DNA from: Mobula hypostoma
Taxonomy: Eukaryota
Direction of reading: 5' to 3'
Length of the DNA stretch: 64,000 nucleotides
Assembly: GCF_963921235.1 (NCBI RefSeq)
Contig: NC_086118.1
Coordinates: 22,196,001 to 22,260,000, forward strand
The notes under the pieces were generated by a model. That model did not search any database. It saw only the letters and a list, made by a program, of their open reading frames with translations, and had not been told where the DNA came from. Below, in pieces: positions 16,192 to 46,330 of the stretch (positions are counted from its first letter, which is position 1; the number at the start of each line of letters is the position of its first letter). Position numbers and translations under genes: made by a program.

Positions 16192-17173
16192 TTAGCGGAA
16201 GTTAGAGAAGTCGATGTTCATGCCATCAGGTTGGAGGCTACCCAGATGGAATATAAGGTGTTGTTCCTCCAACCTGAGTGTGGCTTCATCTTTACAGTAG
16301 AGGAGGCCGTGGATAGACATGTCAGAATGGGAATGGGATGTGGAATTAAAATGTGTGGCCACTGGGAGATCCTGCTTTCTCTGGCGGACAGAGCGTAGAT
16401 GTTCAACAAAGCGGTCTCCCAGTCTGCGTCGGGTCTCACCAATATATAAAAGGCCACATCGGGAGCACCGGACGCAGTATATCACCCCAGTCGCCTCACA
16501 GGTGAAGTGTTGCCTCACCTGGAAGGACTGTTTGGGACCCTGAATGGTGGTAAGGGAGGAAGTGTAAGGGCATGTGTAGCACTTGTTCCGCTTACACTGA
16601 TAAGTGCCAGGAGGGAGATCAGTGGGGAGGGATGGGGGGGACGAATGGACAAGGGAGTTGTGTAGGGAGCAATCCCTGCGGAATCCAGGGGGGGTGGAGG
16701 GAAAGATGTGCTTAGTGGTGGGATCCCGTTGGAGGTGGCGGAAGTTACGGAGAATAATATGTTGGACCCTGAGGCTGGTGGGGTGGTAGGTGAGGACCAG
16801 GGGAACCCTATTCCTAGTGGGGTGGCGGGAGGATGGAGTGAGAGCAGATGTAGGTGAAATGGGGGAGATGCGTTTAAGAGCAGAGTTGATAGTGGAGGAA
16901 GGGAAGCCCCTTTCTTTAAAAAAGGAAGACATCTCCCTGGTCCTAGAATGAAAAGCCTCATCCTGAGAGCAGATGCGGCGGAGACCGAGGAATTGCAAGA
17001 AGGGGATGGCGTTTTTGCAAGAGACAGGGTGAGAAGAGGAATAGTCCAGATAGCTGTGAGAGTCAGTAGGCTTATAGTAGACATCAGTGGATAAGCTGTC
17101 TCCAGAGACAGAAACAGAAAGATTTAGAAAGGGGAGGGAGGTGTCGGAAATGGACCAGGTAAACTTGAGGGCA
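16192..17173 (-). pseudogene. Penelope RT C-terminus/thumb and GIY-YIG endonuclease (uninterrupted frame, 5' truncated)
   Basis: PALKFTW..SLPFL..TDVYYKPTDSHSYLDYSSSHP; CKRNKCYTC linker; GVIYCVRCSRCGLLYIGETRRRLGDRFVEH...RLEEQHLIFHLGSLQPDGMN. Confidence 0.9.
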
Positions 17174-17399
17174 GGGTCTCGGCCTGAAATGTCGACTGCA
17201 CCTCTTCCTACAGATGCTGCTTGGCCTGCTGCGTTCACCAGCAACTTTGATGTGTGTTGCTTGTATATAGTATATTTACTTTGATGATAAAGGTACTTTG
17301 ACTTTAGGTGTGGAATAATCACATCATAGATGGGCACAGTTCACCACCTCAAGTCCATTCTTGTTCTTTGTAGAACAATTTAGTCCGTCTTATTCTTTT

Positions 17400-21809: not shown

Positions 21810-22003
21810 ATACTTCATTAGGAGTTTGAAGAGATTTGGTATGTGAACAAAAGCACTCAAAAACTTCTATAGATGTACCGTGGAGAGCATTCTGACAGTC
21901 TGCATCACTGTCTGGTGGGGGGATGGGGGGGGCTACTGCACAGGACCGAAAGAAGTTGCAGAGGGTTGTAAATCTAGTCAGCTCCATCTTGGGTACTAGC
22001 CTA
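21810..22003 (+). mobile_element. Rex1/Babar internal fragment
   Basis: ...FYRCTVESILTVCITVWWG...AQDRKKLQRVV. Confidence 0.75.
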
Positions 22004-22790
22004 CAAGTCACCCTGCATTCTCATAACATCCTCCTCACTTGTCACACTGCCACCCAGCTTTGTGTCATCTGCAAATTTGCTAATGTTACTTTTGATCTCT
22101 TCATCTAAATCATTAATGTATATTGTAAATAGCTGCGGTCCCAGCACCGAGCCTTGCGGTACCCCACTAGTCACTGCCTGCCATTCTGAAAAGGACACAT
22201 TCGTCCCTACTCTTTGTTTCCTGTCTGCCAACCAATTTTCTATCCATGTCAGTACCCTACCCCCAATACCATTTGCTTTAATTTTGCACACTAACCTCCT
22301 ATGTAGGACCTTATCAAAGGCCTTCTGAAAGTCCAGGTACACTACATCCACTGGCTTTCCTACGTCCATTTTCATAGTTACATTCTCAAAAAATTCCAGA
22401 AAATTAGTCAAGCATGATTTCCCCTTCGTAAATCCATTCTGACTCAGACCTATCCTGCCACTGCTATCCAAATATGCCGCTATTACATCTTTTATAATTG
22501 ATTCCAGCATCTTCCCCACCACTGATGTCAGACTAACTGGTCTGTAATTGCCTGTTTTCTCTCTCCCTCCTTTCTTAAAAAGTGGGATAACATTAGCTAC
22601 CCTCCAATCCGCAGGAACTGATCCTGATTGGAAAATGATTACCAATGCATCCACGATTTCTAGAGCCACCTCCTTAAATACCCTGGGATGCAGACCATTA
22701 GGCCCTGGGGATTTATCAACCTTCAGTCCCATCAGTTTACCCAACACCATTTTGTGCCTGATGCGAATTTCCTTCAGTTCCTCCGTTACC
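22004..22790 (-). mobile_element. CR1 LINE reverse-transcriptase fragment, open frame
   Basis: KSPGPNGLHPRV...WRVANVIPLFKKG...NYRPVSLTSVVGK...VYLDFQKAFDKV...GVPQGSVLGP.LF.IYINDL...KFADDTKLGG. Confidence 0.95.
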
Positions 22791-22816
22791 AGTAACCAGT
22801 AACCAGTCTAAATGGT

Positions 22817-23500
22817 GAGAAGATGGCAGTGCGACGCAGCTCGCAGCGGCCACTCTGGTGATGATTTCTGTATTTGTCAAGTAGTGTGCCATACACAATC
22901 CTGATTTGATAGAGACGGACGTGAGAGCACGGAGGAACATCTGGTGAAACTTCTGAAATGCCTGCTTTGCTGCTGCTGCTACTGTGTGGTCCAGGATCTC
23001 CGGAGGGGAAGGCCCCGAGTCCTCGGCTTTGCTTGTTGCTCGGCGGCTGGGGCAGGGTCGAAGCGCTCAGCAGAGGATGGTGCTCGGAGAGGCTGTGTCG
23101 AAGGGGCTGGTCAGAGGCTTGAAATTTTCGGATGGACTCAGAGTCCGCTGCGGTCGGGTGCTTCCAATGGTGCTGCATCGGCAAGTTGGCGGTGCTTGGA
23201 GGTTCATGGCAGGGAGGGAGAGTTTCTCCCTTCTGCTGCCTGTGTGAGATGATGAGTCTATCGGGACTTTGAGTCTTTTTTTTACCGTACCCATGGTCTG
23301 CTCTCTATCAAATTATAGTATTGCTTTGCACTGTTGTAACTGTATGTTATAATTATGTGGTTTTGTTAGTTTTAGTTTTTGTTTAACCTATGTTTTCTTG
23401 TGATATCATTCTGGAGGAACATTGTATCATTTTTTAATGCGTGCATTTCTAAATGACAATAAACGAGGATTGAGTGTCCTCATAATCTAATGTAATCTAA
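22817..23500 (+). mobile_element. Full-length ~680 bp non-coding, non-autonomous retroposon (AAGATGGC head, (TCTAA)n tail)
   Basis: 12-bp direct repeat tctaaatggtga at 22807-22818 and 23496-23507; homologous copies at 61400-62090(-) and 49173-49362(-). Confidence 0.8.
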
Positions 23501-24159
23501 ATGGTGATTGTATATAGATTGGAACTTGCATATTTAATGAAAAAGCCCACTCTTATTAAGATCCAATTTATAACCCGAAAAACTACTAAACTGAGCAAGT
23601 AGTAAAATTACTGCAGGGATGGATTTCTCTGGATTAGAGATATATAGTAACAGGTCATCTGCAAATAATGATACCTTATGCATCCCATTCCCACGAATAA
23701 TGCCAGATATATTGGGTGAATCACCAGTGATTATAAATCTGATTCTGATTATATCTGTAATGTTAGTGATATGATTGTACTGAAAGAAAAAATTTAATGT
23801 GCTTTCAAATGTGGCTGCAGCTATTCAAGTATTCACACAAGAGACTGATCCCTAGTGCACAAGAAGTGTGGAAGTTTTAATTGCCCTCAAAATGGCAGTT
23901 ACAGGGGTTTGTGTGCAGCACATTAAACAATGGTCATATCAAGTGAATTGGAAGTAAGAAATTAGGTTGGACAGAGTTTTAAAGGGGAAGAAATAATAGG
24001 ATATTGAAACATGCTCTTCACAGAGAAGACATGCACCAGTGGAGACTGATGCATGTCTTCTGACTGCGAAAGGAGCTGCTAAGTGGAATAGCTGCAGTGA
24101 GTAGCAGAGGGAAATTGGACAGATAAATGAGAAGTGATGAAAAAAAAAGTTTTATTGGC

Positions 24160-24600
24160 TGATACGGGTAAAGTTTACACCACACGCTGTTGGAGCAGTG
24201 CTGCCAGGATAATCAAGGACACGACCCACCCAGCCAACACACTTTTTGTCCCTCTTCCCTCTGGGAAAAGGCTCAGGAACTTGAAGACTCGTATGGCCAG
24301 ATTTGGGAACAGCTTCCTTCCAACTGTGATAAGACTGCTGAACAGATCCTGACCCGGATCTGGGCCGTACCCTCCAAATATCCGGACCTGCCTCTCGGTT
24401 TTTTTGCACTACCTTACTTTCCATTTTTCTATTTTCTATTTATGATCTATAATTTAAATTTTTAATATTTACTAATTTTTACTATTTTTAATTTTTAATA
24501 TTTGTAATCCAGGGAGTGGGAAGCACAGAATCAAATATCGCTGTGATGATTGTAATCAATTGTTTGGCAACAATAAAGTATAAAGTAAAGTAAAGTAAAG
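24160..24600 (+). mobile_element. Rex1/Babar LINE 3' end
   Basis: IIKDTTHPANTLFVPLPSGKRLRNLKTRMARFGNSFLPTVIRLLN; AATAAA and (AAAGT)n tail. Confidence 0.85.
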
Positions 24601-24959
24601 TTGAAGGAGGCCAGTGTGGTAGTCAAATATTGCCAAACAGTTTTGCTCTAACTAGTCGTTCTTTTTTTTGATGAGGAATGTATTCCATCTACAAAGGCAC
24701 AATACAATAGCTAAGTATTAAATAGTTGTCAAATAGGATTTGTACTGGTAGCATTTGGGAATCCAAAAGTTCATCACTTAGAAATATTTGGTTTCTCTTT
24801 GATAATTTGTTTCAGTGTTTGCTGATGTAGTGTTTACTCACAGTACTTGGCAAATGGGGTCTTCCAATACAATAATGGTGGCTATTAGCACGTGGTATAA
24901 AATAATCCCATATTCTACTCCTTTCAGAGTATTTAAATCTAGCATGCGTCTTTAAGAGA

Positions 24960-25205
24960 ATGAAAGCAGAGTGTTCTGGAAATACTCAGCTGGTCAGGCA
25001 GAATGTGTGAAAAGAGTTAACATAAACGCCAGGGATACTGCAGATGCTCGAAATCCAGAGTAACACACACACAGCTCTGGAGGAATTGAACAGGTCAGGT
25101 AGCATCTACGGAAATGAATAAACAGTCAGCGTTTCAGGCTGAGACCCTTCTTCAGAGAGTTAACATTTCAGTTTGATCATCTTTTGCTGTACACTCTTGT
25201 ATTTC
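24960..25205 (-). repeat. Older, nested Penelope pLTR-derived short repeats with a decayed hammerhead
   Basis: ctgcagatgct.gaaatcc...ggtcagg.agcatcta.gga...cgtttcaggctgagacccttcttcag, whose reverse complement is CUGAAGA...GAAACG. Confidence 0.6.
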
Positions 25206-25749
25206 AGAATGTAATGATAGTTGGAGTTTTAGTAGTCCTTCTCTACACATTGAGGTCATCAAAGCATCTCATTACCTTTCATTAAAGCTTCATATGCAGT
25301 TTATTGTCATTTTCTGCTGAATGATCTGTTTTTCAGTCATTTAGATCATAATACTTCCTGTATAGAGGGTGATAACTATTTCCAGTGAAGCAAAAGATTT
25401 GCAGTACAATAATGTATTACCTAAACATGTTTCCTTTCGCATTAGCTATTACATACTGGTTTGGAATGGTGAGAAACAAGATACATTCAGGCTAAGAAGG
25501 CAAAAAGGAAAAGCCCATGGGACTAACCCTAGTGCCAGGGGACTGTGTTACAAGGAAAGACTAGAAATACTGGGGTAATTCAATCTAAAGCAGAAAAGTT
25601 CACAAAGTGATTTATTAGTGCATTAGTTTACAAAAGATACAAAAAAAGCTAACCCAGTCTATATTTTAAAATGCAGGAATAGGACAAGGAAACATCTAAC
25701 TGAGTAATATGCTGATATTAAGAGTGATATTATCACTGGTTTACACATC

Positions 25750-26372
25750 ACAGTCAGTGCAGATTGGAAATAACAACTCCTACTCACTGACAATCAACAC
25801 TGGCGCACCTCAGGGATGCATGCTTAGCCCACAGCTCTTCTCTCACTACATCTATGATTGTGTAGTTAAGCACAGCCTATAAATGCCGTCTACAAGTTGC
25901 TTCTGTAAAGGCTGAACTTGTTGGTGGAATTTCAGACTCGTGCTCGTGACGTGTTGGGCAGTTTTGACAACCCATTGTAGAACCTTTCTGTCTGCTGCAG
26001 TGCAGTTTCGATACTACACAGTGATGCAGCTTGACAGGATACTCTCTACTGTGGAATGAGGCGAGTATGGATGTGCAAGGTCCAGCTGTTTCCTTCCTCC
26101 TTAGAAAGTACAGGCATTGGACAGCTTTCTTGAGTGAGTAAGATGTGTTCTGGGACCATGAGAGGTTGTGTGTGCCTTCCACTCCCAGGAGTTTGAAACC
26201 ATTTGTAGTTTCCATTGATGTATCGCTGATCTAAAGGTGGGAGTGAGTTGTGCAAATTCTCCTGAAGTTGATGACCATCCGTTTTGTCTTGTTGACATTA
26301 AAGAAAAGGTTATTCTGCTGGCACTAGGCCTTGAGCTCTTGCACCTCTTCTCTGTAGGCCATCTCATCGTCA
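25750..26372. mobile_element. Rex1/Babar RT fragment with an internal inversion
   Basis: 25750-25937(+) encodes TGAPQGCMLSP...VGGISD; the continuation DDEMAYREEV...FKLLG...QCLYFLRR lies on the minus strand, 26372 to 25940. Confidence 0.7.
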
Positions 26373-26419
26373 CAACGTATGCCAGTGATATTGAATTTGA
26401 CTCTGATTCTGCTCTGTAT

Positions 26420-26785
26420 CGAATTGAATTTAATTGACTTTATTACTTACATCCTTCACATATGTGAGAAGTGAAAAAATCTTTACGGTACCACTCCGTC
26501 TAAATGTGCAATGTGTAATTCATAGTAATTTATAATAAATAGTATGTACAACAGGACAGTCAATAGAACATAGAAATACAATTGTGTCAGTGTGAATTAA
26601 TCAGTCTGATGGCCTGGTGGAAGAAACTATCCAGGAGCCTGGTGGACCTGGCTTTTATGCTGCAGTACTGTTTCCCGGATGATAGCAGCTGGAACAGTTT
26701 GTGGTTGGGGTGACTCGGGTCCCTGAAAGTCCTTCGGGTCCTTTTTACACACCTGCCTTTTGTAAATGTCTTGAATAGTGGGAAG
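26420..26785 (-). mobile_element. Rex1/Babar 3' end, same family as 13805-14808
   Basis: Aligns directly with 13805-14175. Confidence 0.8.
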
Positions 26786-27089
26786 TACTTGGATAGTAAA
26801 TGGTTACAATAACAATACTATTTATTAATGATGCTATTTCTCAGTTACCTTTTTAAAAGATTAATATTAATGATTTTTGAACAGATTTTCTAAAATACAT
26901 AATTTATTTTAATCTATCTCTTATAACAATAGTAGCATAGTAAATACACATAACTAAACAACAGGACTCATTGGTTTTCCTTAATAAAGTACATAATTGT
27001 TGTTACTAATTCATTAATCTATGATAATCTCTGTTCTAAATTACTGTGGCACATAAGAGGTATTTTACATTATCATCATTTTCAATAGG

Positions 27090-27430
27090 TTTCAGTAAGT
27101 ACATTTAATGTCAGAGAAATGTATACAATATTCATCCTGAAATTCCTTTTTTCTTCACAAACATCCACAAAAACAGGAGTGCCCCAAAGAATGAATGACA
27201 GTTAAATGTTAGAACCCCAAAAGCACCCCGCAAAGCTCTCCCCCCCAAGCACAAGTAGCAGCAAGGCAACGCCCCCCCCCACCAAAAAAGCATTGGTGCC
27301 CTCCACCAAACACTCAAACGTGCAGCAAAGCATCAGTAAAGACACAGACTACTTGTTCACCCAGTAATTCAACATACCACAGGCTCCCTCTCTCCCTAAT
27401 AAGGGAAAAAATGGTGTCCCCATTTGTGCA
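27090..27430 (-). repeat. 3' part of a non-coding LINE-tailed retroposon
   Basis: Antisense ...aatttcaggatgaatattgtatacatttctctgacattaaatgtacttactgaaacctattgaa (ATTAAA plus repeat tail). Confidence 0.5.
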
Positions 27431-28714
27431 AACTCTCTCAGAAAGATTTGCCGTCCCTGCTAATGGGTGAAGAAATTTACGACAAATATATATCCTCATT
27501 AGTTATTTGATATAACTCTCCTAAAACTTTGCCTTCTGTTTCTAAATCAAATGAAAATGATAGAACGCTTTTCAGGCAGTTAATTTATGACTCTGTACTC
27601 CCCAGCCACTCATAGCGAGAATATTTAGCTCGTATGTCTGCAGATATGATTTTCAGAGTCATCCTACGTTCTCTGATTCCTCTTCAAAATACGCTTTGAT
27701 TGATTTTATTATTCCCACAAGACAAGGGAGACTCAACTCATGTTATTCACAGTCCATAACTGAATTAGTTACCATTGTCTTAAGTAGAGAAACCAACCAT
27801 GTGCATTGAGTACAACAACTGCACTTAAACTAGGCTTTCCCAGTGGTCTGTTTGCTATTTCAGGACTTGGTGATTAGTGACTGGAGAAAATAACAGGAGT
27901 GTTTAGACAACAACTTAAAACAGTACTGAAGTTTGCTTTAAATCAAGTAAATTTGGCACTGCCCACTATGACACCATACTGAGTTCTACTCTTTTAAATT
28001 TTGAAAGTGCTCAGGGGTTGACCTTTATTATAAAGATTTATATATGAAAATCACATTGCTATAACTTTTCAGAAATTGTTTAATTGAAAAGATACCACCA
28101 GACGCAGATACTGCCCTGGGCTTATTTGTTTAAATAAAGAGGCACTGGTATGAATGTCAAAGATTCTGACACAACTCTTTTAAATTGGTCAGTGTCAGAT
28201 TAGTTGAAAAATATTTGACAATTCCTTAAAATAGTTTCAGATAGGAGCCTGCATCAAGCAGATTTTATATTCTGATGTTTATAGCCAATTAGCATTGTGA
28301 AAGTTTTCGTCAGATAACCTTGCTAATAGTAAGTGACTGCTTAAAATGATAAATTAAACTTGAGCCAACAATGTGTCAAAAGTTACTGTATACAGCCAGA
28401 AGCTGATGGATTACAGGACTAACATATTTTACTATCTACTGTACCTATCAAATTAACTGCAGTAATTCAAGGGCAACAGAATAGATGTGTACCATGGTTG
28501 GCAGTATAATAATCAGAAATATCATTAGAGGAGAATTTGAAACATCCTTCTGCTAAGGAAAATTAATGTTACATTGGAATATTATACAGCACGTGCTCAA
28601 GTTAGTTTGAGATATCACTTTGAAAATTCAAAGATGGTTTCTTTAGGAAAGCTAATGCCAAAAACTCTCAATATCCTATAAAAGACTTGCATGCAGAATT
28701 ACTGCCATATAGGT

Positions 28715-29155
28715 ATACCTCATTCCAGACTTTGGTCTGTCTGCATAGAGTTTGCACATTCTTTCTGTAACTCTGTGGTCTCCTGGAGGTGCTTGGGTTT
28801 CCACCCACATTCCAAAAGATGTACGGGTTGTTGTGTAAATTGCAAACTGTAAGTTGCTGCTAATGTGAAGGTGTCTGGGAGAATCTGGGGAGGGATTCAT
28901 TGGTTGCCTTGTGGGGAGATTAAAATATTATTAGCATGAACATAGAACATAGAACTGTACGACACATTTATGACCCCTTCAGCCCATGATTTTCTGCCAA
29001 TCTATATAAACCTACTTTACAATCCATCTAATCATTTCTGTTTTGCACAGCCCTTAACCCTCCAGTTTTCTTACATCCATGTCCCTATCTAAGAGTCTTT
29101 CCAATGTCCCTACTGTACCAGTATCTACCACCAGCCCCAGAAGTGCATTCCAGTT
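28715..29155. mobile_element. V-SINE remnant (+, ~28715-28935) abutting a CR1 3' tail (-, ~28940-29155)
   Basis: ctgtctgcatagagtttgcacattct...gggtttccacccacattccaaaagatgtacggg; then gaacatagaacatagaa CR1 tail. Confidence 0.55.
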
Positions 29156-31310: not shown

Positions 31311-33524
31311 TGGTGGCACTCGCAGACCAGTGCCCAATTTCGGTAGAGTGAATCATTTCATTTTTAGAAAAATATTTGTCTGTTGTTTATTTTGGAAAAG
31401 TCAATAAAAACCCTAGGACACATATAATCACATGGATTTGTGGAGAATTTACTCAGGAATTCAAATAAGTAATCACGTTTTGTATATATTCCATATTAGC
31501 ATCAGTACAGCAGAAAATGTTACCACCCCGCCCCCAAAAGGTAAAAACCTCATTTGGAGAAATTTCTGGAGTTTTATCAATGTCATGATATTTTCCATAT
31601 TGTTGTATCAAATCAAAACAATCTTAAGGTTTTGTCATAGCATATAGAATTACAGTACAATAATTCAAATGTGGAGTTCCACACGGTCATAACCTAGGCC
31701 CCATTTGTTTGTCAAATGAATATATTTAATCAAAGACTGCTTTCCATACTTTGTTTTCCATACTTTCATAACCTATTAATAATCATAATAATTTTCCAAG
31801 TCTTCCACGTGTTCCACATCTTCATCTGAACTTTCTACACTCTATGAGGTGGATGCCCGGTTCTCACAGTCTGCCAGTCTACACATGTCAGTACACCTGA
31901 GGCCATTTGCAATACACATACATCTTGGGAGTGAACATTTTTTTGGACAGTTACAGGCCAGTAGATCCAGGATGGCATTGGGTGCTGGCTGGCCTTCCAT
32001 CCAGTGCACCACCAACTGTTCAGCTTCCTCTTCTCTCTCCATCTTCCATCCTCTGCCAACAGGGCTTGGCACTTGTGGGTCCTTCTCCAAACACCTTCTC
32101 CATATACCAGCCTGGTAGTTGGCTAGCTGTCCCCATCACGGGAGGCGCGCAAAAGCCCAAGTACCACGTTCTCTACCGTGTCAATGTATGATATCCAGAA
32201 TGTGGATAGTTCTCCATTGTTGTGACAGAGGTGTTCCAGAAAGTCTGTCCACAGGGTTATCAACTCAGCTAAGAGTGGACTTTGCAGCAGATTGTTCAAC
32301 TTCTGTTGGTTCGAGTCACTGGCCATGTTGTTCACATGGTCTAAGAATTATTTGATCATCCCACTCCTCTCTGGAACGTTGTCCTTAACCCATGGTGTGA
32401 ACTCTGCCCATGTGAGTCTAATCAGTGCTTCATAGATGTAATTGTGGACCCTAACAGCACGATTGTAGTGTTTACCATCAAGGACTCTATGAAGGACCCC
32501 TCTGCGACAATTCCAGCCTCTATGCATACGTCCTTTAGACCAGCAACCTGAAATCGCTTTCCTCAGATGGCTAAGGCATTACATATGGTATGGAATGTGC
32601 CCATCCTGAGAAGAATGTTGGAGAAGTGCTCTTTGTGCTTCCAGGCAATCTCAGTGGCTTTTGCATAGAGTGCTTGATCCATGACTACCACAATTGTTTC
32701 TAGATGAAATTCCTTTCTGATTAGCTCTGATTGGTTCAAGATTTCAGGTACTGTGGTCAACTCTGTGGCTGGTGAATTAATGGTTGGCAGATACCCAACA
32801 ATATCTTGTGAGATTGGTTCTTGGTCCCTGGTGCTGATATTAAAACCAGTCCAGCTTGGGATTGTCTGATTCTCTGGATCTGTTTGCCTTGCAAGTGTCC
32901 ATACCAGGTTCTTCTTGCAGGCAAGAAGAGCAGCTTCCTTGGTTTCCTGCACACAGTGTTCCCTGGTTGAGCCCACTAGTGCACCTGCTACATATACTTC
33001 CAGTTCTTGATCCTCAATGGTGACTGATCTCTGCTTCGGTTTCTCAATGTGTGAAAACTCAGCTCTTGGCAGATGTGGTCCACAGACAATGGCTTGTATC
33101 ACTATGCCATTGACTCCATGTGACGTACCCATTCTAGTGAGAGTTTCCTCAAGTCTCTCGATATTGTCCCATGCAAGATTGGTGAAGACATGAGGCTTGA
33201 TGGAGGCTGGAAGTACAACTCTCTGGTTGGAGGCTGTTGCTAGCTTTTGGAGACACAGAGCAGTGCCGTTCTCTTCAAGTTGGGAGTAAGACACCCCATG
33301 CCCAAGCCTGTTCAGTGTTTGGATGAACTCAGTGTTACTCATCAGTGTTTTTACTGCATTAGGAAGTAGAAGGTGCTTTGGTGGTATACGTTGACCACGT
33401 GTCACAGCTACTACCGCTGTAATGCTATCACATATTTTTTAGCACTAGGGGTGTATACCTTGCCAAAAATCACTATGAGAATTATTCCCCTCAGATGGTA
33501 CCAGTGGCCCTGGCTTACGGACTA
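31311..33524 (-). mobile_element. Internally deleted Academ-like (AcademX) DNA transposon
   Basis: Transposase motifs LNRLGHGVSY, AWDNI, IPSWTGFN, VGYLP.I..PATE, VVVMDQALYAKA, LRMGTFH, GKHYNRAVR; joined at ~32127 to a C-terminal Cys8/CXC finger (CNCPKKCSLPRCMCIANGLRCTDMCRLADC). Ends are tentative; the right end is CTA at 33522-33524. Confidence 0.75.
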
Positions 33525-33680
33525 ATAAGGATATTTGTTAGTTCTATAGTAATTAAAGTGGCTTTACATTCTTTCCCTACATTTAATGGAAGCTTCAAAG
33601 GGCAGCACTTCGAATGCATATTCAGGTGGCTTGGTATGATGATTACTAATTATTTTATATAAAGGTACACTCTATGCCAC

Positions 33681-33909
33681 GGATGTCAAGATAGTTGTTG
33701 TGACGCATCTACTATGGTAGTGTAGTGGGTGACACTTGTTGCTCTCACTTACAGCTTCCAAGACTGGCTAACAGTCTCATGAGAAGGAGAGCCGAGTGTA
33801 TAAGTCTCCTTGTGCCAATACACAGCCTCTCCAACAGCAAGCCTCATGTAGTGCCTCCTCGCTGGCGACACACGGAAACACCTTTCGGAATCAGGCTGAA
33901 CTACAGAGG
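33681..33909 (+). ncRNA. HDV-like (nested double pseudoknot) self-cleaving ribozyme, probably decayed in this copy
   Basis: P2 CCUC(A)UGUAGU 33842-52 / ACUACAGAGG 33900-09; P3 GCC/GGC; L3 UCCUCGCU; P1-3' GACACAC; P1.1 GG; J4/2 CUGA; P1-5' candidate GGAUGUC at the element's first base. Confidence 0.75.
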
Positions 33910-34279
33910 ACTGGGAAGGGGTCTGGCCCCCGCACATGCAGCATGCAGCTTGGTGCTTGTGAACCAGATTCCTAGTTATGGGTAAATAGCCCTAGTGGGC
34001 AGCCTCAGGAGAGACGAAGGCTATGGGAGTAAACCAAGGCAGCAAATCTGGAGTGGAACCCCTAAGACGGCTGGATGACATTGAACATCCTTCTGGCAGC
34101 TCCTGCAGCCAAGTTGGTGCCAAACTTATTTCCTCATAAGCTTTCCTTTGGACTACACTGCTGAGGTAGAGAGGGGGATCTAGACGACTGGGGATCTCAG
34201 GATCTCCATACCTTCTGTTCAGGCTTGTGATGATCATCATTATTACCCGTTGTCCTTTGAGACAGATGGATGTCAACCA
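33681..34279 (+). mobile_element. ~600 bp non-coding, non-autonomous retroposon with an RTE-like 5'UTR segment and a CAA-type tail
   Basis: 12-bp TSD actctatgccRc at 33669-33680 and 34280-34291; segment gaaggctatgggagtaaacc...aaatctggagtggaacccctaagacgg resembles RTE 5'UTRs as I recall them; no credible ORF. Confidence 0.75.
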
Positions 34280-37200
34280 ACTCTATGCCGCAAACTGTAA
34301 TACACTTTGGCTTGAAACCTACTCCATTCAGTTTTGCACCTCATTTGTTCTTAGACCATTAAGCCATTATTGAAACCAACTACATTGGATGATCAAGGAT
34401 GACCATCTCAGACTTGAAATGTTAACTCCATTTTTCTTCCAAATTTGTGATCTGACTTGCTGAGTATTTCCAGTATTTTCTATTTTGGTTCAGATATTAT
34501 CCCTAAGCTCCAAAGTCTTCAAGCTCAGTGAACCAACTATTAAACTTCAGTTCTACCCAAACAGAGAGAAAGGAAAACTGGATATAATCTATAGTAGGAA
34601 ACTGATCATCAAAATCCCAGTAAGCAATTCATAAGCGTATCTTCTCAGTGTAGGTGAAGTTAGAGGCAGTAGATAATAAAGGAGAAGGAAAACTGGTTAA
34701 CGTTCATTCAAAGCAATTTCATTTAAAAAAGGGTTAATATGCAGTGTTGTTCATTTGGGTTACATTCATATATTCATTTTATGGCTTCATAAATTTGTAC
34801 TTGAGCTGTTTAAAGTTTAGCATTTCAGGTACTCACATATAGGCTCAGTTTTGTCTATTTTTTACTCACTTTGAATTGTCAGGAAATAATCATTATTCAG
34901 ATGGGTTTTTAATATCCTTCCTGTCGGAGTTGCTTCAACTTTGCTTGCTCACTTGTGATGTGAATAGCTGACATGAGATGAAACTGTCCTTCCTGCACTA
35001 ATAAACCTCAATTGTAAAATAATGTATAGGTCAATCCCATATATAATTTATTTCCCCATAAGTATTTTACAGTTTGAGATGGAGAACAGATTAAAAGCCT
35101 TGTGGGTTTTTTTTTTGGTGAACATTCAGGTCAGCTAATAGTCACACAACCTTTCCTGATGGAGTTTGTGTGTGAAGCTGACTTGACAGACCAGCAGTAT
35201 ATTCCAAGAGAATGAAGGAGATAAATATTTTACATTGCACAAAATGTGGTTTTGGCATCTTCCAAAGCAAATTTCTCTCAGTTTGTTTCTGGATTTTAAG
35301 TTTTGCTTCTGTTTTTTTTAAAATTAAGATTTCTACAGGTTCGTGGTTGATCAATGACAGCTGCATATTATCACGTTTATGATTATTGATTGAGGGCCAG
35401 CTGGTGCCATTAGTTGACTGTGTTATACAAAGCAAACATTCATTCGGTCAACTGGCATGACTATTAGCCCTCAGCAGGCTCTGATGTGAGAGGCTGATCA
35501 CCTTTACATGAAGACATATCTGAAATCTATGGGGAGTGCATTTCATTAGCTTCAGTAGTTCAACTTGAAACAAAGCACGTGGCCCATTTAGAAATTTTTC
35601 ATGATAAGTTTTTAAAGAGGGGAACATGTTTAAATTCACTTGATGTTGTAGCTTAAAGTTTTTCCATTGAATGATCAACATGGACCATTGAAGACTTAAT
35701 TATGTCTCCTGTTCCTTGGGTTCATTCATGTTTGCTGTCATTTATTTTTAATATTTAAGAACTGAAGCCAGCTTCCGGGTTTGTTGAGAACTGACTCTTT
35801 TATTTGTTCACCTGAAATTTATATTACCTCCGCATAAACCCCAGAACTAATTAGGAGAGCTTCTCTTCCTGCACCATCGACATAACCTTACTAAACCAGA
35901 GTGGTGTTATTTCTTTGTTGGTCAGAATAAAACTTATTTTGAATGTGTTTCCAGCTTTTCTAAAGCCCAGAACATGATGAAAACGAAAACCAATTTATTG
36001 CTCTCCTTATAATGTACTATGATAATGTGAATGTGTCTAAGAAGAGTATGCTAATATGTTTGTACCAGATGCAGTTACTTCAGTGATTCTTCCCTTTATG
36101 TTACTGTCAAATACATCATAATGTTCTTTCTAAAATGATCTGTTTCTCTCTGCTTTTTTTTTAGTTGACACTTTACTAGATATTAATTGTTAGGGGAACA
36201 TCAGTAAATTACCCAGTCAAACTGATGCAAATATACTGCTTTCCATGACTGGTGGATGCCGGATTGGATTGATTGCTTCCTCCAAGCTGATTTGATGAGT
36301 GGAAGTTAAGTTGTCATTTATTTCTTCAAAGATATTTGTCTGGACAAATTATCAATTCTCATTAGTTGTGCCCTCTCTTGATTGGTGGGGTGTTTAAAGA
36401 TGCTTGCAATGACATTAGATTTCAACCAATTCATTAATTATTTATCTGCATGGAATATTGTCATAAAGGCACTCTATCATTAATAATAATAATCATGAGA
36501 TGATTAAGGCATCAGATTCACAGGTTAAAACTGAATGAATGGAAATTTGATTACAAACTGGAACTAGGTGATCAGGTAATTTGCAAGTTGTGAACAAAAG
36601 CTTCTCTGTGTGTGTGGAAGGGGTTAGTTAGTCTTTACCACTCAGAGTTGCATGAAAAGATGACTTTGATACAAGAGGTAATTTATAATAAACATCTATC
36701 CAGAAATGACCATGTGCCAAGTGTCTATATATGTGTTTAAAATGATCAAATCTTCATTCTTGTGGAGAAAGAAATCCAGACATTTTCAATGTGACCTTCA
36801 GTTTGCTTTTGATTTGTTTTCCTTGGTAGATAACAAATTGTTCTTTTAATAGCCAAAAATGACATCATTTCATTTGTTTGCTTTCAGATGTGCTGGAGTT
36901 TATTATGTTCGCTCTATACGTTCTCCAGCCAAACCAGCTAGCAAATCAAATATTTTCCATCATAAAATAATAGGTGTATGTTTGGTGCAGTGTGAAAAGA
37001 TTATTGATTTACTAGTAATTATTGGGCAATGGACTGAACACATAAAGAATTTATTGCATTTTGAACAAATAACTGCACATAGCCTTTGTGCCAAAGTGCA
37101 TGCCAATCAATGGTTTTCTTTAACCAGAAGGCATTGCTAAGTATTGCGAAATAATTACACTTTTGTGGGATTTGACTCTGCTTTCAAGGTCTTGAAAATC

Positions 37201-45263: not shown

Positions 45264-46330
45264 CTATTTGTCTAATCTCACCAGCTCTATAATCTGGACA
45301 ATAGTCAAATCAGAAAGAGAGGGCACTGCTGTGGATTCTGCCTGCTTTGGTGAGTGATTTTTACACTTCCCTTGTTTTTTTCAGAGCATTGCCTCCCACC
45401 ATGGTCTGAGAAGCCACAGCTGTGACAAATCATCTCCTTTACCTGCCCACATCTACTCCAGCAGTTCCTTGCTACGTGCCCCAGCTGCTGGCACTCAAAG
45501 CAAGTTCTCTGTGATGTCACAGCAGCTATATTCACTACAGCCACTTTACAACTTCTTATCCCCCTCCTCTGGTATATCTCACGGACCCACGACACTATCA
45601 CGTAATAGGTCGATCCCACCACTATCCCCAAATCTAAAACTTCCAAGTGGGCTGAGTTCAGGCCTTCCTTCCGCATTTTTAGGAAGACAGGGACATCCCT
45701 CCCTGGATTATCTAAACCTGAATACTCCTCATATGCTCGATATTTACGTTTTGCATAACCCACGGTTGGATCATCAGCTCTCTGAACCACTGAAATCATT
45801 CCACAGTTACTCTCACCTTCCCCCCAGTCACTGCCTCACTTTCCCTTTAAAGAAGCAGTATCATTCTTCATTGCTGGCGTTCCCGGTAGATGCCCGGTAG
45901 TACCATCCCGTACTCCCTGGGCCATACTGTCCCAGATACTCCTTGGACACTTCACTTTTAGCAGCACATGTGTATTTTTGGGGTGCATCTGGTTGCCCAC
46001 CTCCTTGAGCATATGCCAGAATTCTGAATTCCCACATGCGACATTAAGTGAGGGCAACTCTGACAAAATGCTTTGCTACTCCCCGGGGGTGAATGGTTTA
46101 TGAATGGTTATAATCAGGGTCAAGGGCTCACTTGGGTCATCAGGGTTCTCAGTCTGAAGTTGCCTGACCTCAATAGATGCCAGCCTGACAGATATATCTG
46201 GGGACAACATCTCCCTCAAATATCTCCACACTAATTCCCTGATTATGCAAAATATGAATGATGGATAAAAATTAAACAGTACATACTTTAAAACACAGAG
46301 TACGTATGCTGCAATATGCCATTTATGTGT
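45264..46330 (-). pseudogene. ERV gag remnant with two CCHC knuckles
   Basis: VVQRADDPTVGYAKRKY (MHR-like), CFECQQLGHVARNC, CHSCGFSDHGGRQC. The N-terminal boundary is approximate. Confidence 0.75.

What the first reader, a model, noticed from the sequence alone, without database searches (positions are those of the whole stretch)
33681..33909. HDV-like ribozyme heading a ~600 bp non-coding mobile element, with the cleavage G at the insertion start
Seen: 33853-33867 reads GCCTCCTCGCTGGCG, identical over 15 nt to P3-L3-P3' of the HDV genomic ribozyme. It is framed by a 10-bp P2 (33842-52/33900-09, one bulge), P1-3' GACACAC, the P1.1 GG, an AAACA junction, a P4 remnant CCU..AGG and J4/2 CUGA with the catalytic C at 33896. 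The best P1-5' candidate is GGATGTC (5 of 7 pairs) at 33681, the first base after a 12-bp TSD. The ~155-nt J1/2 holds hairpins (AGACTG/CAGTCT 33761-77; AAGGAGA/TCTCCTT 33784-811). Known: RTE, R2 and L1Tc retrotransposons use HDV-like ribozymes to define their 5' ends. Inference: this is a promoter-less, ORF-less SINE-like parasite that cuts itself out of host transcripts and is mobilised by an RTE partner. P4 appears to have lost ~5 nt from a CCUGAUUC-UUCG-GAAUCAGG hairpin, so this copy may be inactive.
Basis: partly seen in the sequence, partly recalled or inferred. Interest (0 to 1): 0.88.

Follow-up and report, generated by a model that had tools for sequence, protein, structure and literature searches.

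The report
Decayed ribozyme-headed retroposon copy
This is an old, dead copy of a very abundant, non-coding jumping element of a ray or shark genome whose front end is a hepatitis-delta-type self-cutting RNA module, an arrangement already known from other retrotransposons and seen many times elsewhere in this genome.

Summary
Window 33853-33867 is identical over 15 nt to the HDV genomic ribozyme as printed in a paper. It is framed by a 10-bp all-Watson-Crick P2 (shuffle p about 0.001), with P1', the P1.1 GG and a J4/2 C in HDV order. The module sits in a 599-bp ORF-less insertion (33681-34279) flanked by a 12-bp target-site duplication with one mismatch.

Public contigs from four related organisms show a high-copy family. 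Its full-length 5' ends stop at 33681-33684.

P1 is the weak point. This copy pairs at 5 of 7 positions, and five other 7-mers in J1/2 do the same. The family 5' end, (T)GGTGTC, gives five contiguous pairs but mismatches at the two cleavage-proximal positions. An internal GUGUGUA pairs better. Rfam gives no hit.

The RTE partner was not testable here. Ribozyme-headed non-LTR elements and their non-autonomous derivatives are already described: Agam-2/RTE ribozymes, R2 SIDEs, NARTc and bipartite non-autonomous LINEs. This scan has noted HDV-type ribozymes 65 times in its index, and all ten such notes I saw are on other DNA of this genome.

Verdict: real, a new member of a known kind, and this copy is inactive.

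The parts
33669..33680 (+). Left target-site duplication, ACTCTATGCCAC
   Evidence: Read directly. It matches 34280-34291 at 11 of 12 positions. Repeat depth rises from single-copy level here.
33681..34279 (+). 599-bp non-coding retroposon copy: ribozyme head plus 3' body and tail
   Evidence: Depth of related contigs rises at 33681-84 and falls at 34279-81 in four organisms. No + strand ORF exceeds 86 aa. There is no other copy in the window.
33681..33687 (+). Candidate P1 5' strand, GGATGTC; the family reads (T)GGTGTC
   Evidence: It pairs with GACACAC at 5 of 7 positions, tied with five other 7-mers. The family 5' terminus comes from loose ends at 33684. Duplex energy is -2.7 kcal/mol here and -6.2 for the family form.
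33688..33841 (+). 154-nt structured J1/2 domain, closed by GUUGUUG (33694-700) with CAACAGC (33832-38)
   Evidence: MFE is -50.5 kcal/mol, z = -2.54. The closing helix appears in the window fold and in the majority-letter fold. The closing helix alone is not significant: 76 of 500 shuffles have 7 or more closing pairs.
33796..33802 (+). Rival internal P1 strand: GTGTATA here, GUGUGUA in copies with G33796 and G33800
   Evidence: It gives 6 contiguous pairs with P1' in the majority-letter version, -7.3 kcal/mol.
33842..33852 (+). P2 5' strand, CCTCATGTAGT
   Evidence: It forms 10 Watson-Crick pairs with 33900-09, with A33846 bulged. Shuffle p is about 0.0009.
33853..33866 (+). P3 (GCC / GGC) with L3 TCCTCGCT
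   Evidence: Identical to the HDV genomic ribozyme. Within the family, the only variants at 15% or more are at CpG positions.
33867..33875 (+). P1 3' strand GACACAC followed by the P1.1 GG
   Evidence: Aligned to HDV GCCGGCU-GG by the custom model. Within the family it varies only at CpG 33866/67 and 33873/74.
33876..33895 (+). J1.1/4 and P4 remnant; 5 nt lost in this copy
   Evidence: After 33879 the family reads TGAACTCCTTTCGGACTCAGG in 120-130 contigs per organism in three organisms and 72 in the fourth (X5), and 33890 is C in 97%. Fold energy is -6.0 kcal/mol for the family and -0.2 for this copy.
33896..33899 (+). J4/2 CTGA; C33896 is the position of the catalytic C
   Evidence: Aligned with the C of HDV GGCGAA by the custom model. 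No variant reaches 15% in the family.
33900..33909 (+). P2 3' strand, ACTACAGAGG
33926..34279 (+). 3' body and tail, the most abundant part of the family. It ends GGATGTCAACCA with no poly(A).
   Evidence: Summed contig depth reaches about 50000 against about 14 in the flanks. 3' loose ends fall at 34279 and 34281. No structure signal: z = +0.69.
34280..34291 (+). Right target-site duplication, ACTCTATGCCGC
   Evidence: Read directly.

Best explanation
Window 33681-34279 is an old, fixed and decayed copy of a high-copy, ORF-less non-LTR retroposon family of a cartilaginous fish. The element has two parts: a 5' module that is a large HDV-type ribozyme, and a 3' body and tail without poly(A).

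The ribozyme module runs, in order: P1 strand at the very 5' end; about 154 nt of structured J1/2; a 10-bp P2; a P3/L3 identical to HDV; P1'; P1.1; P4; and a J4/2 C.

Inferred mechanism. Source copies have no promoter of their own and are transcribed as part of longer host transcripts. The ribozyme cuts at or next to the element's first base and so defines the 5' end. A LINE reverse transcriptase that recognises the 3' tail copies the RNA into new sites by target-primed reverse transcription. This produces the 12-bp duplication and many 5'-truncated copies.

What is shown: the insertion anatomy, the family, the clustered 5' ends and the ribozyme core.
What is inferred: cleavage itself, its exact site, and the identity of the LINE partner (RTE according to unchecked notes).

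This particular copy is dead. P4 has lost 5 nt, P1 has two mismatches, and the copy sits at 80-95% likeness to most related contigs.
For: - Core identity to HDV.
- P2 shuffle p about 0.001.
- The HDV-only covariance model has its single hit here.
- Target-site duplication read directly.
- 4090 and 2750 related contigs in two organisms, and 1100-1231 on the ribozyme part in two more. Similarity is bounded by the duplication. The 3' part is far deeper than the 5' part.
- 20-35 contigs per organism break into unlike AT-rich flank just before 33684.
- P4 is intact in the family.
- No ORF, no tRNA, no B box.
- J1/2 folds better than shuffles, with its ends paired 6 nt after P1 and 3 nt before P2. 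A structured J1/2 plus a long P2 is the architecture that activates the Agam-2 ribozymes (PMC4908430). Those ribozymes are RTE-associated from my own knowledge of Ruminski et al. 2011, a paper that is not held.
- In R2, P1 and P1' lie 23 to over 700 nt apart (PMC3774820).
- Non-autonomous 5'+3' derivatives of ribozyme-bearing LINEs are known (PMC5786205; PMC3414825).
Against: - Rfam HDV-family models do not match, even at E up to 10.
- P1 is imperfect. This copy pairs at 5 of 7 positions, tied with five other 7-mers. The family 5' end (T)GGTGTC pairs only GUGUC/GACAC and leaves the two cleavage-proximal positions mismatched.
- P1 mismatches are uncommon in HDV-like ribozymes and have been linked to loss of in vitro cleavage (PMC3774820).
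- The closing helix of J1/2 is not significant on its own.
- No covariation could be tested, because only contig summaries were available, not individual copies.
- No LINE partner is in the window.
- RNA 5' ends could not be mapped, because all runs were held as contigs.
Confidence: 0.7

Rival explanations
1. The ribozyme module is a non-cleaving relic carried along when the element arose by internal deletion of its LINE. The family's 5' ends would then be set by something else, such as a transcription start or reverse-transcriptase run-off, and the HDV-type core no longer cuts in this family.
For: - The family P1 has two mismatches at the cleavage-proximal end.
- Such mismatches have been associated with no in vitro activity.
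- Rfam gives no hit.
- CpG positions in the core are decayed in 34-54% of copies in organism A (run X1), so the family is old.
Against: - Outside CpG sites, the core, P2, P4 and the J4/2 C show no variant at 15% or more across four organisms.
- 5' ends cluster exactly where the ribozyme architecture predicts P1.
- R2 ribozymes with a 4-bp P1, or with mismatches, can still cleave.
Confidence: 0.2
2. The true P1 is internal, at 33796-33802 (GUGUGUA in many copies), giving a compact ribozyme with a 39-nt J1/2. The first 115 nt would be a later 5' extension or a separate head, possibly a degenerate tRNA-like pol III head.
For: - It gives 6 contiguous pairs starting at the cleavage-side G, -7.3 kcal/mol, better than the 5'-terminal strand.
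- TAGTGTAGTGG at 33718-28 fits a loose A-box pattern.
- Depth of related contigs rises steeply near 33795-33825, most clearly in organism E.
- 5' extension of ribozyme-headed elements has been modelled for R2.
Against: - No cluster of unlike-flank loose ends is reported at 33796. Contigs clipped at 33813 continue upstream with family sequence: agreement 0.74-0.89 over the 30 letters of consensus shown, median clipped length 38-70 nt.
- The depth step is explained by this copy's 8 differences in 33783-33812.
- The strand lies in the loop of a conserved hairpin.
- ARAGORN finds no tRNA, there is no B box, and the A-box pattern is near chance level: 22 matches against 15 expected.
- The A-box-like site is 38 nt from the 5' end, too far for a pol III start at base 1.
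Confidence: 0.12
3. It is an endogenous fragment of a delta-like circular RNA virus, or the resemblance to HDV is chance.
For: 15-nt identity to the HDV genomic ribozyme.
Against: - Thousands of dispersed copies with target-site duplications and 5' truncation.
- No ORF.
- The 3' half has no unusual structure: z = +0.69.
- Active-site identity between retrotransposon ribozymes and HDV is documented and attributed to convergence.
- Chance is excluded by the P2 test, the 15-mer expectation and family conservation.
Confidence: 0.02

Closest known systems
drz-Agam-2 family: large HDV-like ribozymes of Anopheles gambiae (Webb et al. 2016, PMC4908430). Their RTE association comes from Ruminski et al. 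2011, cited from my own knowledge and via PMC5786205 and PMC3774820; that paper is not held.
   Same: Position at the 5' end of a non-LTR element. A long structured J1/2 (P1.2) domain joined by short linkers, 6 and 3 nt here. An extended P2, 10 bp here against 12 bp there.
   Different: The host is a cartilaginous fish. The core (P3/L3) is identical to HDV. P1 is imperfect in the family majority. The element here is non-coding. No sequence comparison with Agam-2 could be made, and Rfam models do not match.
R2 SIDEs: short internally deleted elements of Drosophila R2 (Eickbush & Eickbush 2012, PMC3414825)
   Same: A non-autonomous element made of a 5' HDV-like ribozyme joined to a LINE 3' end, propagated by the LINE's target-primed reverse transcription.
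   Different: SIDEs are rare and specific to the rDNA target site. This family is dispersed, with roughly a thousand or more copies and variable target sites.
Bipartite non-autonomous LINEs of the RTE, Ingi and R2 clades (Kojima 2018, PMC5786205) and NARTc/L1TcRz of Trypanosoma cruzi (PMC3185411, PMC3383444)
   Same: The 5' end plus the 3' end of a parent LINE without its ORF. The 5' end is retained, plausibly because it carries a self-cleaving ribozyme.
   Different: The parent LINE was not identified here. In NARTc the same 77 nt also act as a promoter, and no promoter evidence exists here.
HDV genomic ribozyme
   Same: 15 consecutive nt (P3-L3-P3' and the first P1' base). The same order of P2, P3, P1', P1.1 GG, P4, J4/2 C and P2'.
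   Different: J1/2 is 154 nt against 3 nt. P1, P2 and P4 have different sequences. The context is a retroposon, not a circular RNA virus. Such identity is documented for some R2 ribozymes and attributed to convergence.

Membership tests
HDV-like self-cleaving ribozyme (nested double pseudoknot) | 3-bp P3 closing a 7-8 nt L3 with the conserved active-site residues | tested here: met
   GCC-TCCTCGCT-GGC at 33853-66 is identical to published HDV sequences. Within the family, variation is limited to CpG decay.
HDV-like self-cleaving ribozyme (nested double pseudoknot) | P2 helix of at least 5-7 bp enclosing P3, P1', P4 and J4/2 | tested here: met
   10 Watson-Crick pairs, 33842-52 / 33900-09. 18 of 20000 shuffles do as well. 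The custom model also pairs it.
HDV-like self-cleaving ribozyme (nested double pseudoknot) | P1.1: two residues after P1' complementary to CC of L3 | tested here: met
   GG at 33874-75 directly follows P1', and CC is at 33857-58. This is complementarity by sequence only.
HDV-like self-cleaving ribozyme (nested double pseudoknot) | Catalytic C in J4/2 just before the P2 3' strand | tested here: met
   C33896 in CTGA is aligned to the C of HDV GGCGAA. No family variant reaches 15%.
HDV-like self-cleaving ribozyme (nested double pseudoknot) | P1 of 6-7 bp whose first nucleotide follows the cleavage site | tested here: inconclusive
   This copy pairs at 5 of 7 positions, non-contiguous, tied with five other 7-mers. 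The family 5' end gives 5 contiguous pairs with the two cleavage-side positions mismatched. An internal rival gives 6 contiguous pairs.
HDV-like self-cleaving ribozyme (nested double pseudoknot) | Match to curated Rfam models of the family | tested here: not met
   No match at gathering score or at E up to 10. This is expected to be hard with a 154-nt J1/2. A model built from HDV alone scores 14.8 bits, E about 0.11.
HDV-like self-cleaving ribozyme (nested double pseudoknot) | Mg2+-dependent self-cleavage | not testable with these tools
   This needs an in vitro transcription and cleavage assay.
Non-LTR retroposon inserted by target-primed reverse transcription | Target-site duplication, a defined 3' end, many dispersed copies, and 5' truncation | tested here: met
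   12-bp duplication with one mismatch. 3' ends at 34279 and 34281. Thousands of contigs. The 3' part is far deeper than the 5' part.
RTE-mobilised non-autonomous element (bipartite non-autonomous LINE) | 5' and 3' ends shared with an autonomous RTE LINE of the same genome | not tested
   No LINE sharing sequence with the element is in the window. The only RT-bearing elements seen here are Penelope-type. The RTE link rests on unchecked scan notes.
Classical SINE (pol III head) | tRNA-, 7SL- or 5S-derived head with A and B boxes | tested here: not met
   ARAGORN finds nothing. There is no + strand B box in the element. One A-box-like 11-mer is present at chance level.

The most novel reading that the evidence does not exclude
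A vertebrate (cartilaginous fish) genome carries a dispersed 'ribozyme-SINE' of roughly a thousand or more copies. It would be a promoter-less, ORF-less retroposon whose only head is a large HDV-type ribozyme with an HDV-identical active site. It would still cleave despite a non-canonical P1 base (G.A / U.C next to the scissile bond). Its 5' and 3' ends share a GGNTGTCAA motif that might act in strand transfer or end regeneration.
Probability: 0.3. Interest if true: 0.55.

Novelty: new member of a known kind. Interest (0 to 1): 0.35.

Why it matters
If the family's source copies cleave, this is a high-copy vertebrate example of a retroposon that replaces a promoter with a self-cleaving ribozyme. 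That strategy is documented so far mainly for insect R2 and RTE elements and for trypanosome L1Tc/NARTc. It would add a chondrichthyan family with an HDV-identical active site to the debate on whether the HDV ribozyme and retrotransposon ribozymes share ancestry or converged. It would also provide a natural test of how much P1 imperfection a large, J1/2-stabilised HDV-like ribozyme tolerates. For annotation, it explains a large repeat class in this genome. This single copy has no function of its own.

Tried and rejected
- Rfam at gathering score on the whole window, and at E up to 10 on 33500-34400: no HDV-family hit.
- blastn of the element against the window: no second copy and no LINE partner.
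- Exact-pattern scans for family copies: metagenome contigs twice, 0 hits; viral contigs once, 0 hits. The bare 14-mer in viral contigs gave 119+ scattered hits in phage contigs. I treat these as chance matches and did not follow them up.
- tRNA or pol III head: ARAGORN negative, no B box, A-box-like motif at chance level.
- Coding potential of the 3' half: stops in all + strand frames. A 94-aa open frame on the minus strand was taken as chance and not searched.
- Structure in the 3' 180 nt: z = +0.69, none.
- Tandem repeats near the element: none.
- The closing helix of J1/2 as independent evidence for the 5'-terminal P1: not significant, 76 of 500 shuffles.
- RNA 5'-end mapping: not possible. 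All runs offered were stored as contigs, and the table of places where molecules begin or end was empty.
- Literature search for HDV-like ribozymes in cartilaginous fish: nothing found.
- Ruminski et al. 2011 is not held in the library.
- For folding only, I applied the majority letters reported by read laying to the 245-nt ribozyme domain. No full-length consensus was built.

Full report
**What is there**

GCCTCCTCGCTGGCG at 33853-33867 occurs once in the window; 0.01 matches are expected even with two mismatches allowed. It is identical to the corresponding 15 nt of the HDV genomic ribozyme as printed in two papers (PMC5718131; PMC10711553).

The order of parts follows HDV:

| Part | Coordinates | Sequence |
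|---|---|---|
| P2 5' strand | 33842-52 | CCTCATGTAGT |
| P3 / L3 / P3' | 33853-66 | GCC-TCCTCGCT-GGC |
| P1' | 33867-73 | GACACAC |
| P1.1 | 33874-75 | GG |
| J1.1/4 | 33876-80 | AAACA |
| P4 remnant | 33881-95 | CCTTTCGGAATCAGG |
| J4/2 | 33896-99 | CTGA |
| P2 3' strand | 33900-09 | ACTACAGAGG |

- P2 is ten Watson-Crick pairs with one bulged A. Only 18 of 20000 shuffles of the downstream 70 nt do as well.
- A covariance model built only from the two published HDV sequences (P2, P3 and the outer P4 pairs) has a single hit in the window on both strands: 33837-33906, 14.8 bits, rough E 0.11. It places C33896 on the catalytic C.
- Rfam's own HDV-family models give nothing, at gathering score or at E up to 10. 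That is a real negative for formal membership, though those models do not allow a 154-nt J1/2.

**It is a mobile element**

ACTCTATGCCAC (33669-80) and ACTCTATGCCGC (34280-91) flank a 599-bp insert. The insert has no + strand ORF above 86 aa, stops in all + frames of its 3' half, no tRNA and no B box.

Laying public contigs at 80% likeness gave 4090 and 2750 pieces in DNA runs of two organisms. The ribozyme part alone gave 1100-1231 pieces in two further organisms.

- Summed depth sits at single-copy level (about 12-16 in X1) up to 33674 and again from 34304, and is far higher between those points.
- Depth reaches about 22000-29000 over the ribozyme core and about 50000 at 34101-29. It is only about 600-2000 over 33685-33734 and about 260-600 over 33735-33804.
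- The tool warns that depth is not a copy number. As a rough guide only, this means a thousand or more copies, most lacking or diverged in the 5' part.
- Part of the step near 33813 is an artefact. This copy differs from the family at 8 of 30 positions in 33783-33812, and alignments are clipped there.
- A contig of organism B bridges the left flank and the element (33550-33842, 7 differences), so the insertion predates the split of organisms A and B. Shorter flank overlaps suggest the same for two more organisms.
- CpG positions in the core are decayed in 34-54% of copies in organism A (run X1), and most related contigs are 80-95% like this copy. The family and this copy are therefore old.
- A follow-up note of this scan identifies the genome as a ray or shark. 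I did not check that myself.

- *5' ends.* In each of four organisms, 20-35 contigs with a median overhang of 255 nt run into unlike, AT-rich sequence (agreement 0.44-0.47) immediately before 33684. The last loose letters are TGG.
- *J4/2 C.* No variant reaches 15% at 33896.
- *P4.* After 33879 the family reads TGAACTCCTTTCGGACTCAGG (120-130 contigs per organism in three organisms, 72 in the fourth, X5), and 33890 is C in 97%. This folds as CUGA-AC-UCC UUUC GGA-C-UCAG at -6.0 kcal/mol, against -0.2 for this copy.
- *P1.* This is the weak point.
  - In this copy GGATGTC pairs with GACACAC at 5 of 7 positions, and five other 7-mers in J1/2 do equally well.
  - In the family, GUGUC pairs with GACAC (five contiguous pairs, -6.2 kcal/mol). 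The two positions next to the predicted scissile bond are mismatched (G opposite A, U opposite C).
  - The ideal partner would be GUGUGUC.
  - P1 mismatches are uncommon in HDV-like ribozymes and have been linked to absent in vitro cleavage. However, a 4-bp P1 is active in one R2 ribozyme, and a quarter of R2 ribozymes have one or two mismatches at the top of P1 (PMC3774820).
  - A rival strand exists. Copies with G at 33796 and 33800 read GUGUGUA at 33796-802, which gives six contiguous pairs from the cleavage side (-7.3 kcal/mol).
  - I rank the rival lower for two reasons. Contigs clipped at 33813 continue upstream with family sequence rather than with flank (agreement 0.74-0.89 over the 30 letters of consensus shown; median clipped length 38-70 nt). 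The strand also lies in the loop of a conserved hairpin. It cannot be excluded.

**Architecture**

J1/2 (33688-33841) folds to a rod at -50.5 kcal/mol, z = -2.54. GUUGUUG (33694-700) pairs with CAACAGC (33832-38), six nt after the terminal P1 strand and three nt before P2. This helix appears in the window fold and in a fold with the family's majority letters, and the latter fold also forms GUGUC/GACAC.

[quoted passage not shown] The RTE association of those ribozymes is from my own knowledge of Ruminski et al. 2011, a paper that is not held. In R2 ribozymes P1 and P1' lie 23 to over 700 nt apart.

The fit is suggestive, but the closing helix is not significant by itself: 76 of 500 shuffles have seven or more closing pairs. 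I had no individual copies on which to count covariation.

**Mechanism**

The best reading is a non-autonomous derivative of a ribozyme-bearing LINE.
- Read-through transcription supplies the RNA.
- The ribozyme trims the 5' end.
- The 3' tail, which has no poly(A) and ends ...GGATGTCAACCA, recruits a LINE reverse transcriptase.
- Target-primed reverse transcription gives the duplication and the 5'-truncated copies.

The insertion anatomy, the family, the clustered ends and the core are shown. Cleavage, its exact site and the partner LINE are inferred. The RTE assignment rests only on unchecked notes of this scan that describe RTE LINEs with such ribozymes elsewhere in the genome. The only RT-bearing elements I saw in this window are Penelope-type, with RVT_1 and weak GIY-YIG hits.

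This copy is inactive in all likelihood: P4 is gone, P1 has two mismatches and the copy is heavily diverged.

**Comparison with what is known**

- Non-autonomous derivatives that keep the ribozyme head and the LINE tail are described: R2 SIDEs (PMC3414825), NARTc (PMC3185411, PMC3383444) and the 'bipartite non-autonomous LINEs' of the RTE, Ingi and R2 clades.
- Identity of the active site to HDV has been seen in some R2 ribozymes and attributed to convergence.
- I found no paper on such elements in cartilaginous fish.
- The scan's index holds 65 notes with the words 'ribozyme' and 'HDV'. All ten that I was shown lie on other DNA of this genome.

The finding is therefore a new member of a known kind, and this locus is one decayed copy among very many.

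**Unexplained**

In this copy the nine bases GGATGTCAA stand both at the 5' end (33681-89) and just before the 3' end (34268-76). The family 5' end, TGGTGTCAA, already matches the 3' motif at 7 of 9 positions, and this copy's two private differences make the match perfect. I have no tested explanation. A template jump or a gene-conversion-like event during insertion is possible.

**Limits**

- Both read-laying runs returned summaries of short contigs, not sequences of individual copies.
- No raw RNA reads were available.
- No second copy is in the window.
- The majority-letter version used for folding covered only the 245-nt ribozyme domain.

Noticed in passing
window 33681-33689 and 34268-34276: The same 9-mer, GGATGTCAA, stands at the element's first bases and just before its 3' end (followed by CCA). 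The family 5' end (TGGTGTCAA) matches the 3' motif at 7 of 9 positions, and this copy's two private changes complete the match. The origin is unexplained.
   Followed up: partly
window 33550-33842 (left junction): A contig of a second organism (run X5) bridges the unique flank and the element with 7 differences and a 10-nt insertion at 33632, so the insertion is orthologous in at least two species. Runs of two further organisms cover the last 21-26 flank bases at single-copy depth.
   Followed up: partly
window 33718-33728: TAGTGTAGTGG fits a loose pol III A-box pattern and resembles a tRNA D-arm. It sits 38 nt from the element's 5' end, there is no B box, and ARAGORN finds no tRNA. The pattern occurs 22 times in the window against 15 expected.
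   Followed up: yes
window 34279-34281: Family 3' ends fall at two places 2 nt apart (48 and 33 contigs in X1). The loose letters begin CCAAC / CAAC, which suggests a short CAAC-type terminal repeat of variable length rather than poly(A).
   Followed up: no
window 16192-17337 (-) and 22001-22750 (-): These ORFs have a weak GIY-YIG hit (E 9e-4, below the Pfam cut-off) and a clear RVT_1 hit (E 1e-25).
   Followed up: partly
window 45305-45799 (-): A 164-aa ORF has a zf-CCHC zinc knuckle (E 9e-5), probably a gag remnant of another retroelement in a C-rich, strongly skewed stretch (44-46 kb).
   Followed up: no
window 33699 (RNA-labelled runs X20 and X19): One contig in each of two organisms' RNA-labelled runs carries the element's sequence from 33699 onward. 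Upstream it has a different, mutually identical 30 nt (...GGAGATGTATGGCTG) and extends at least 255 nt further. This may be a transcribed relative, perhaps the LINE or an exonised copy.
   Followed up: no
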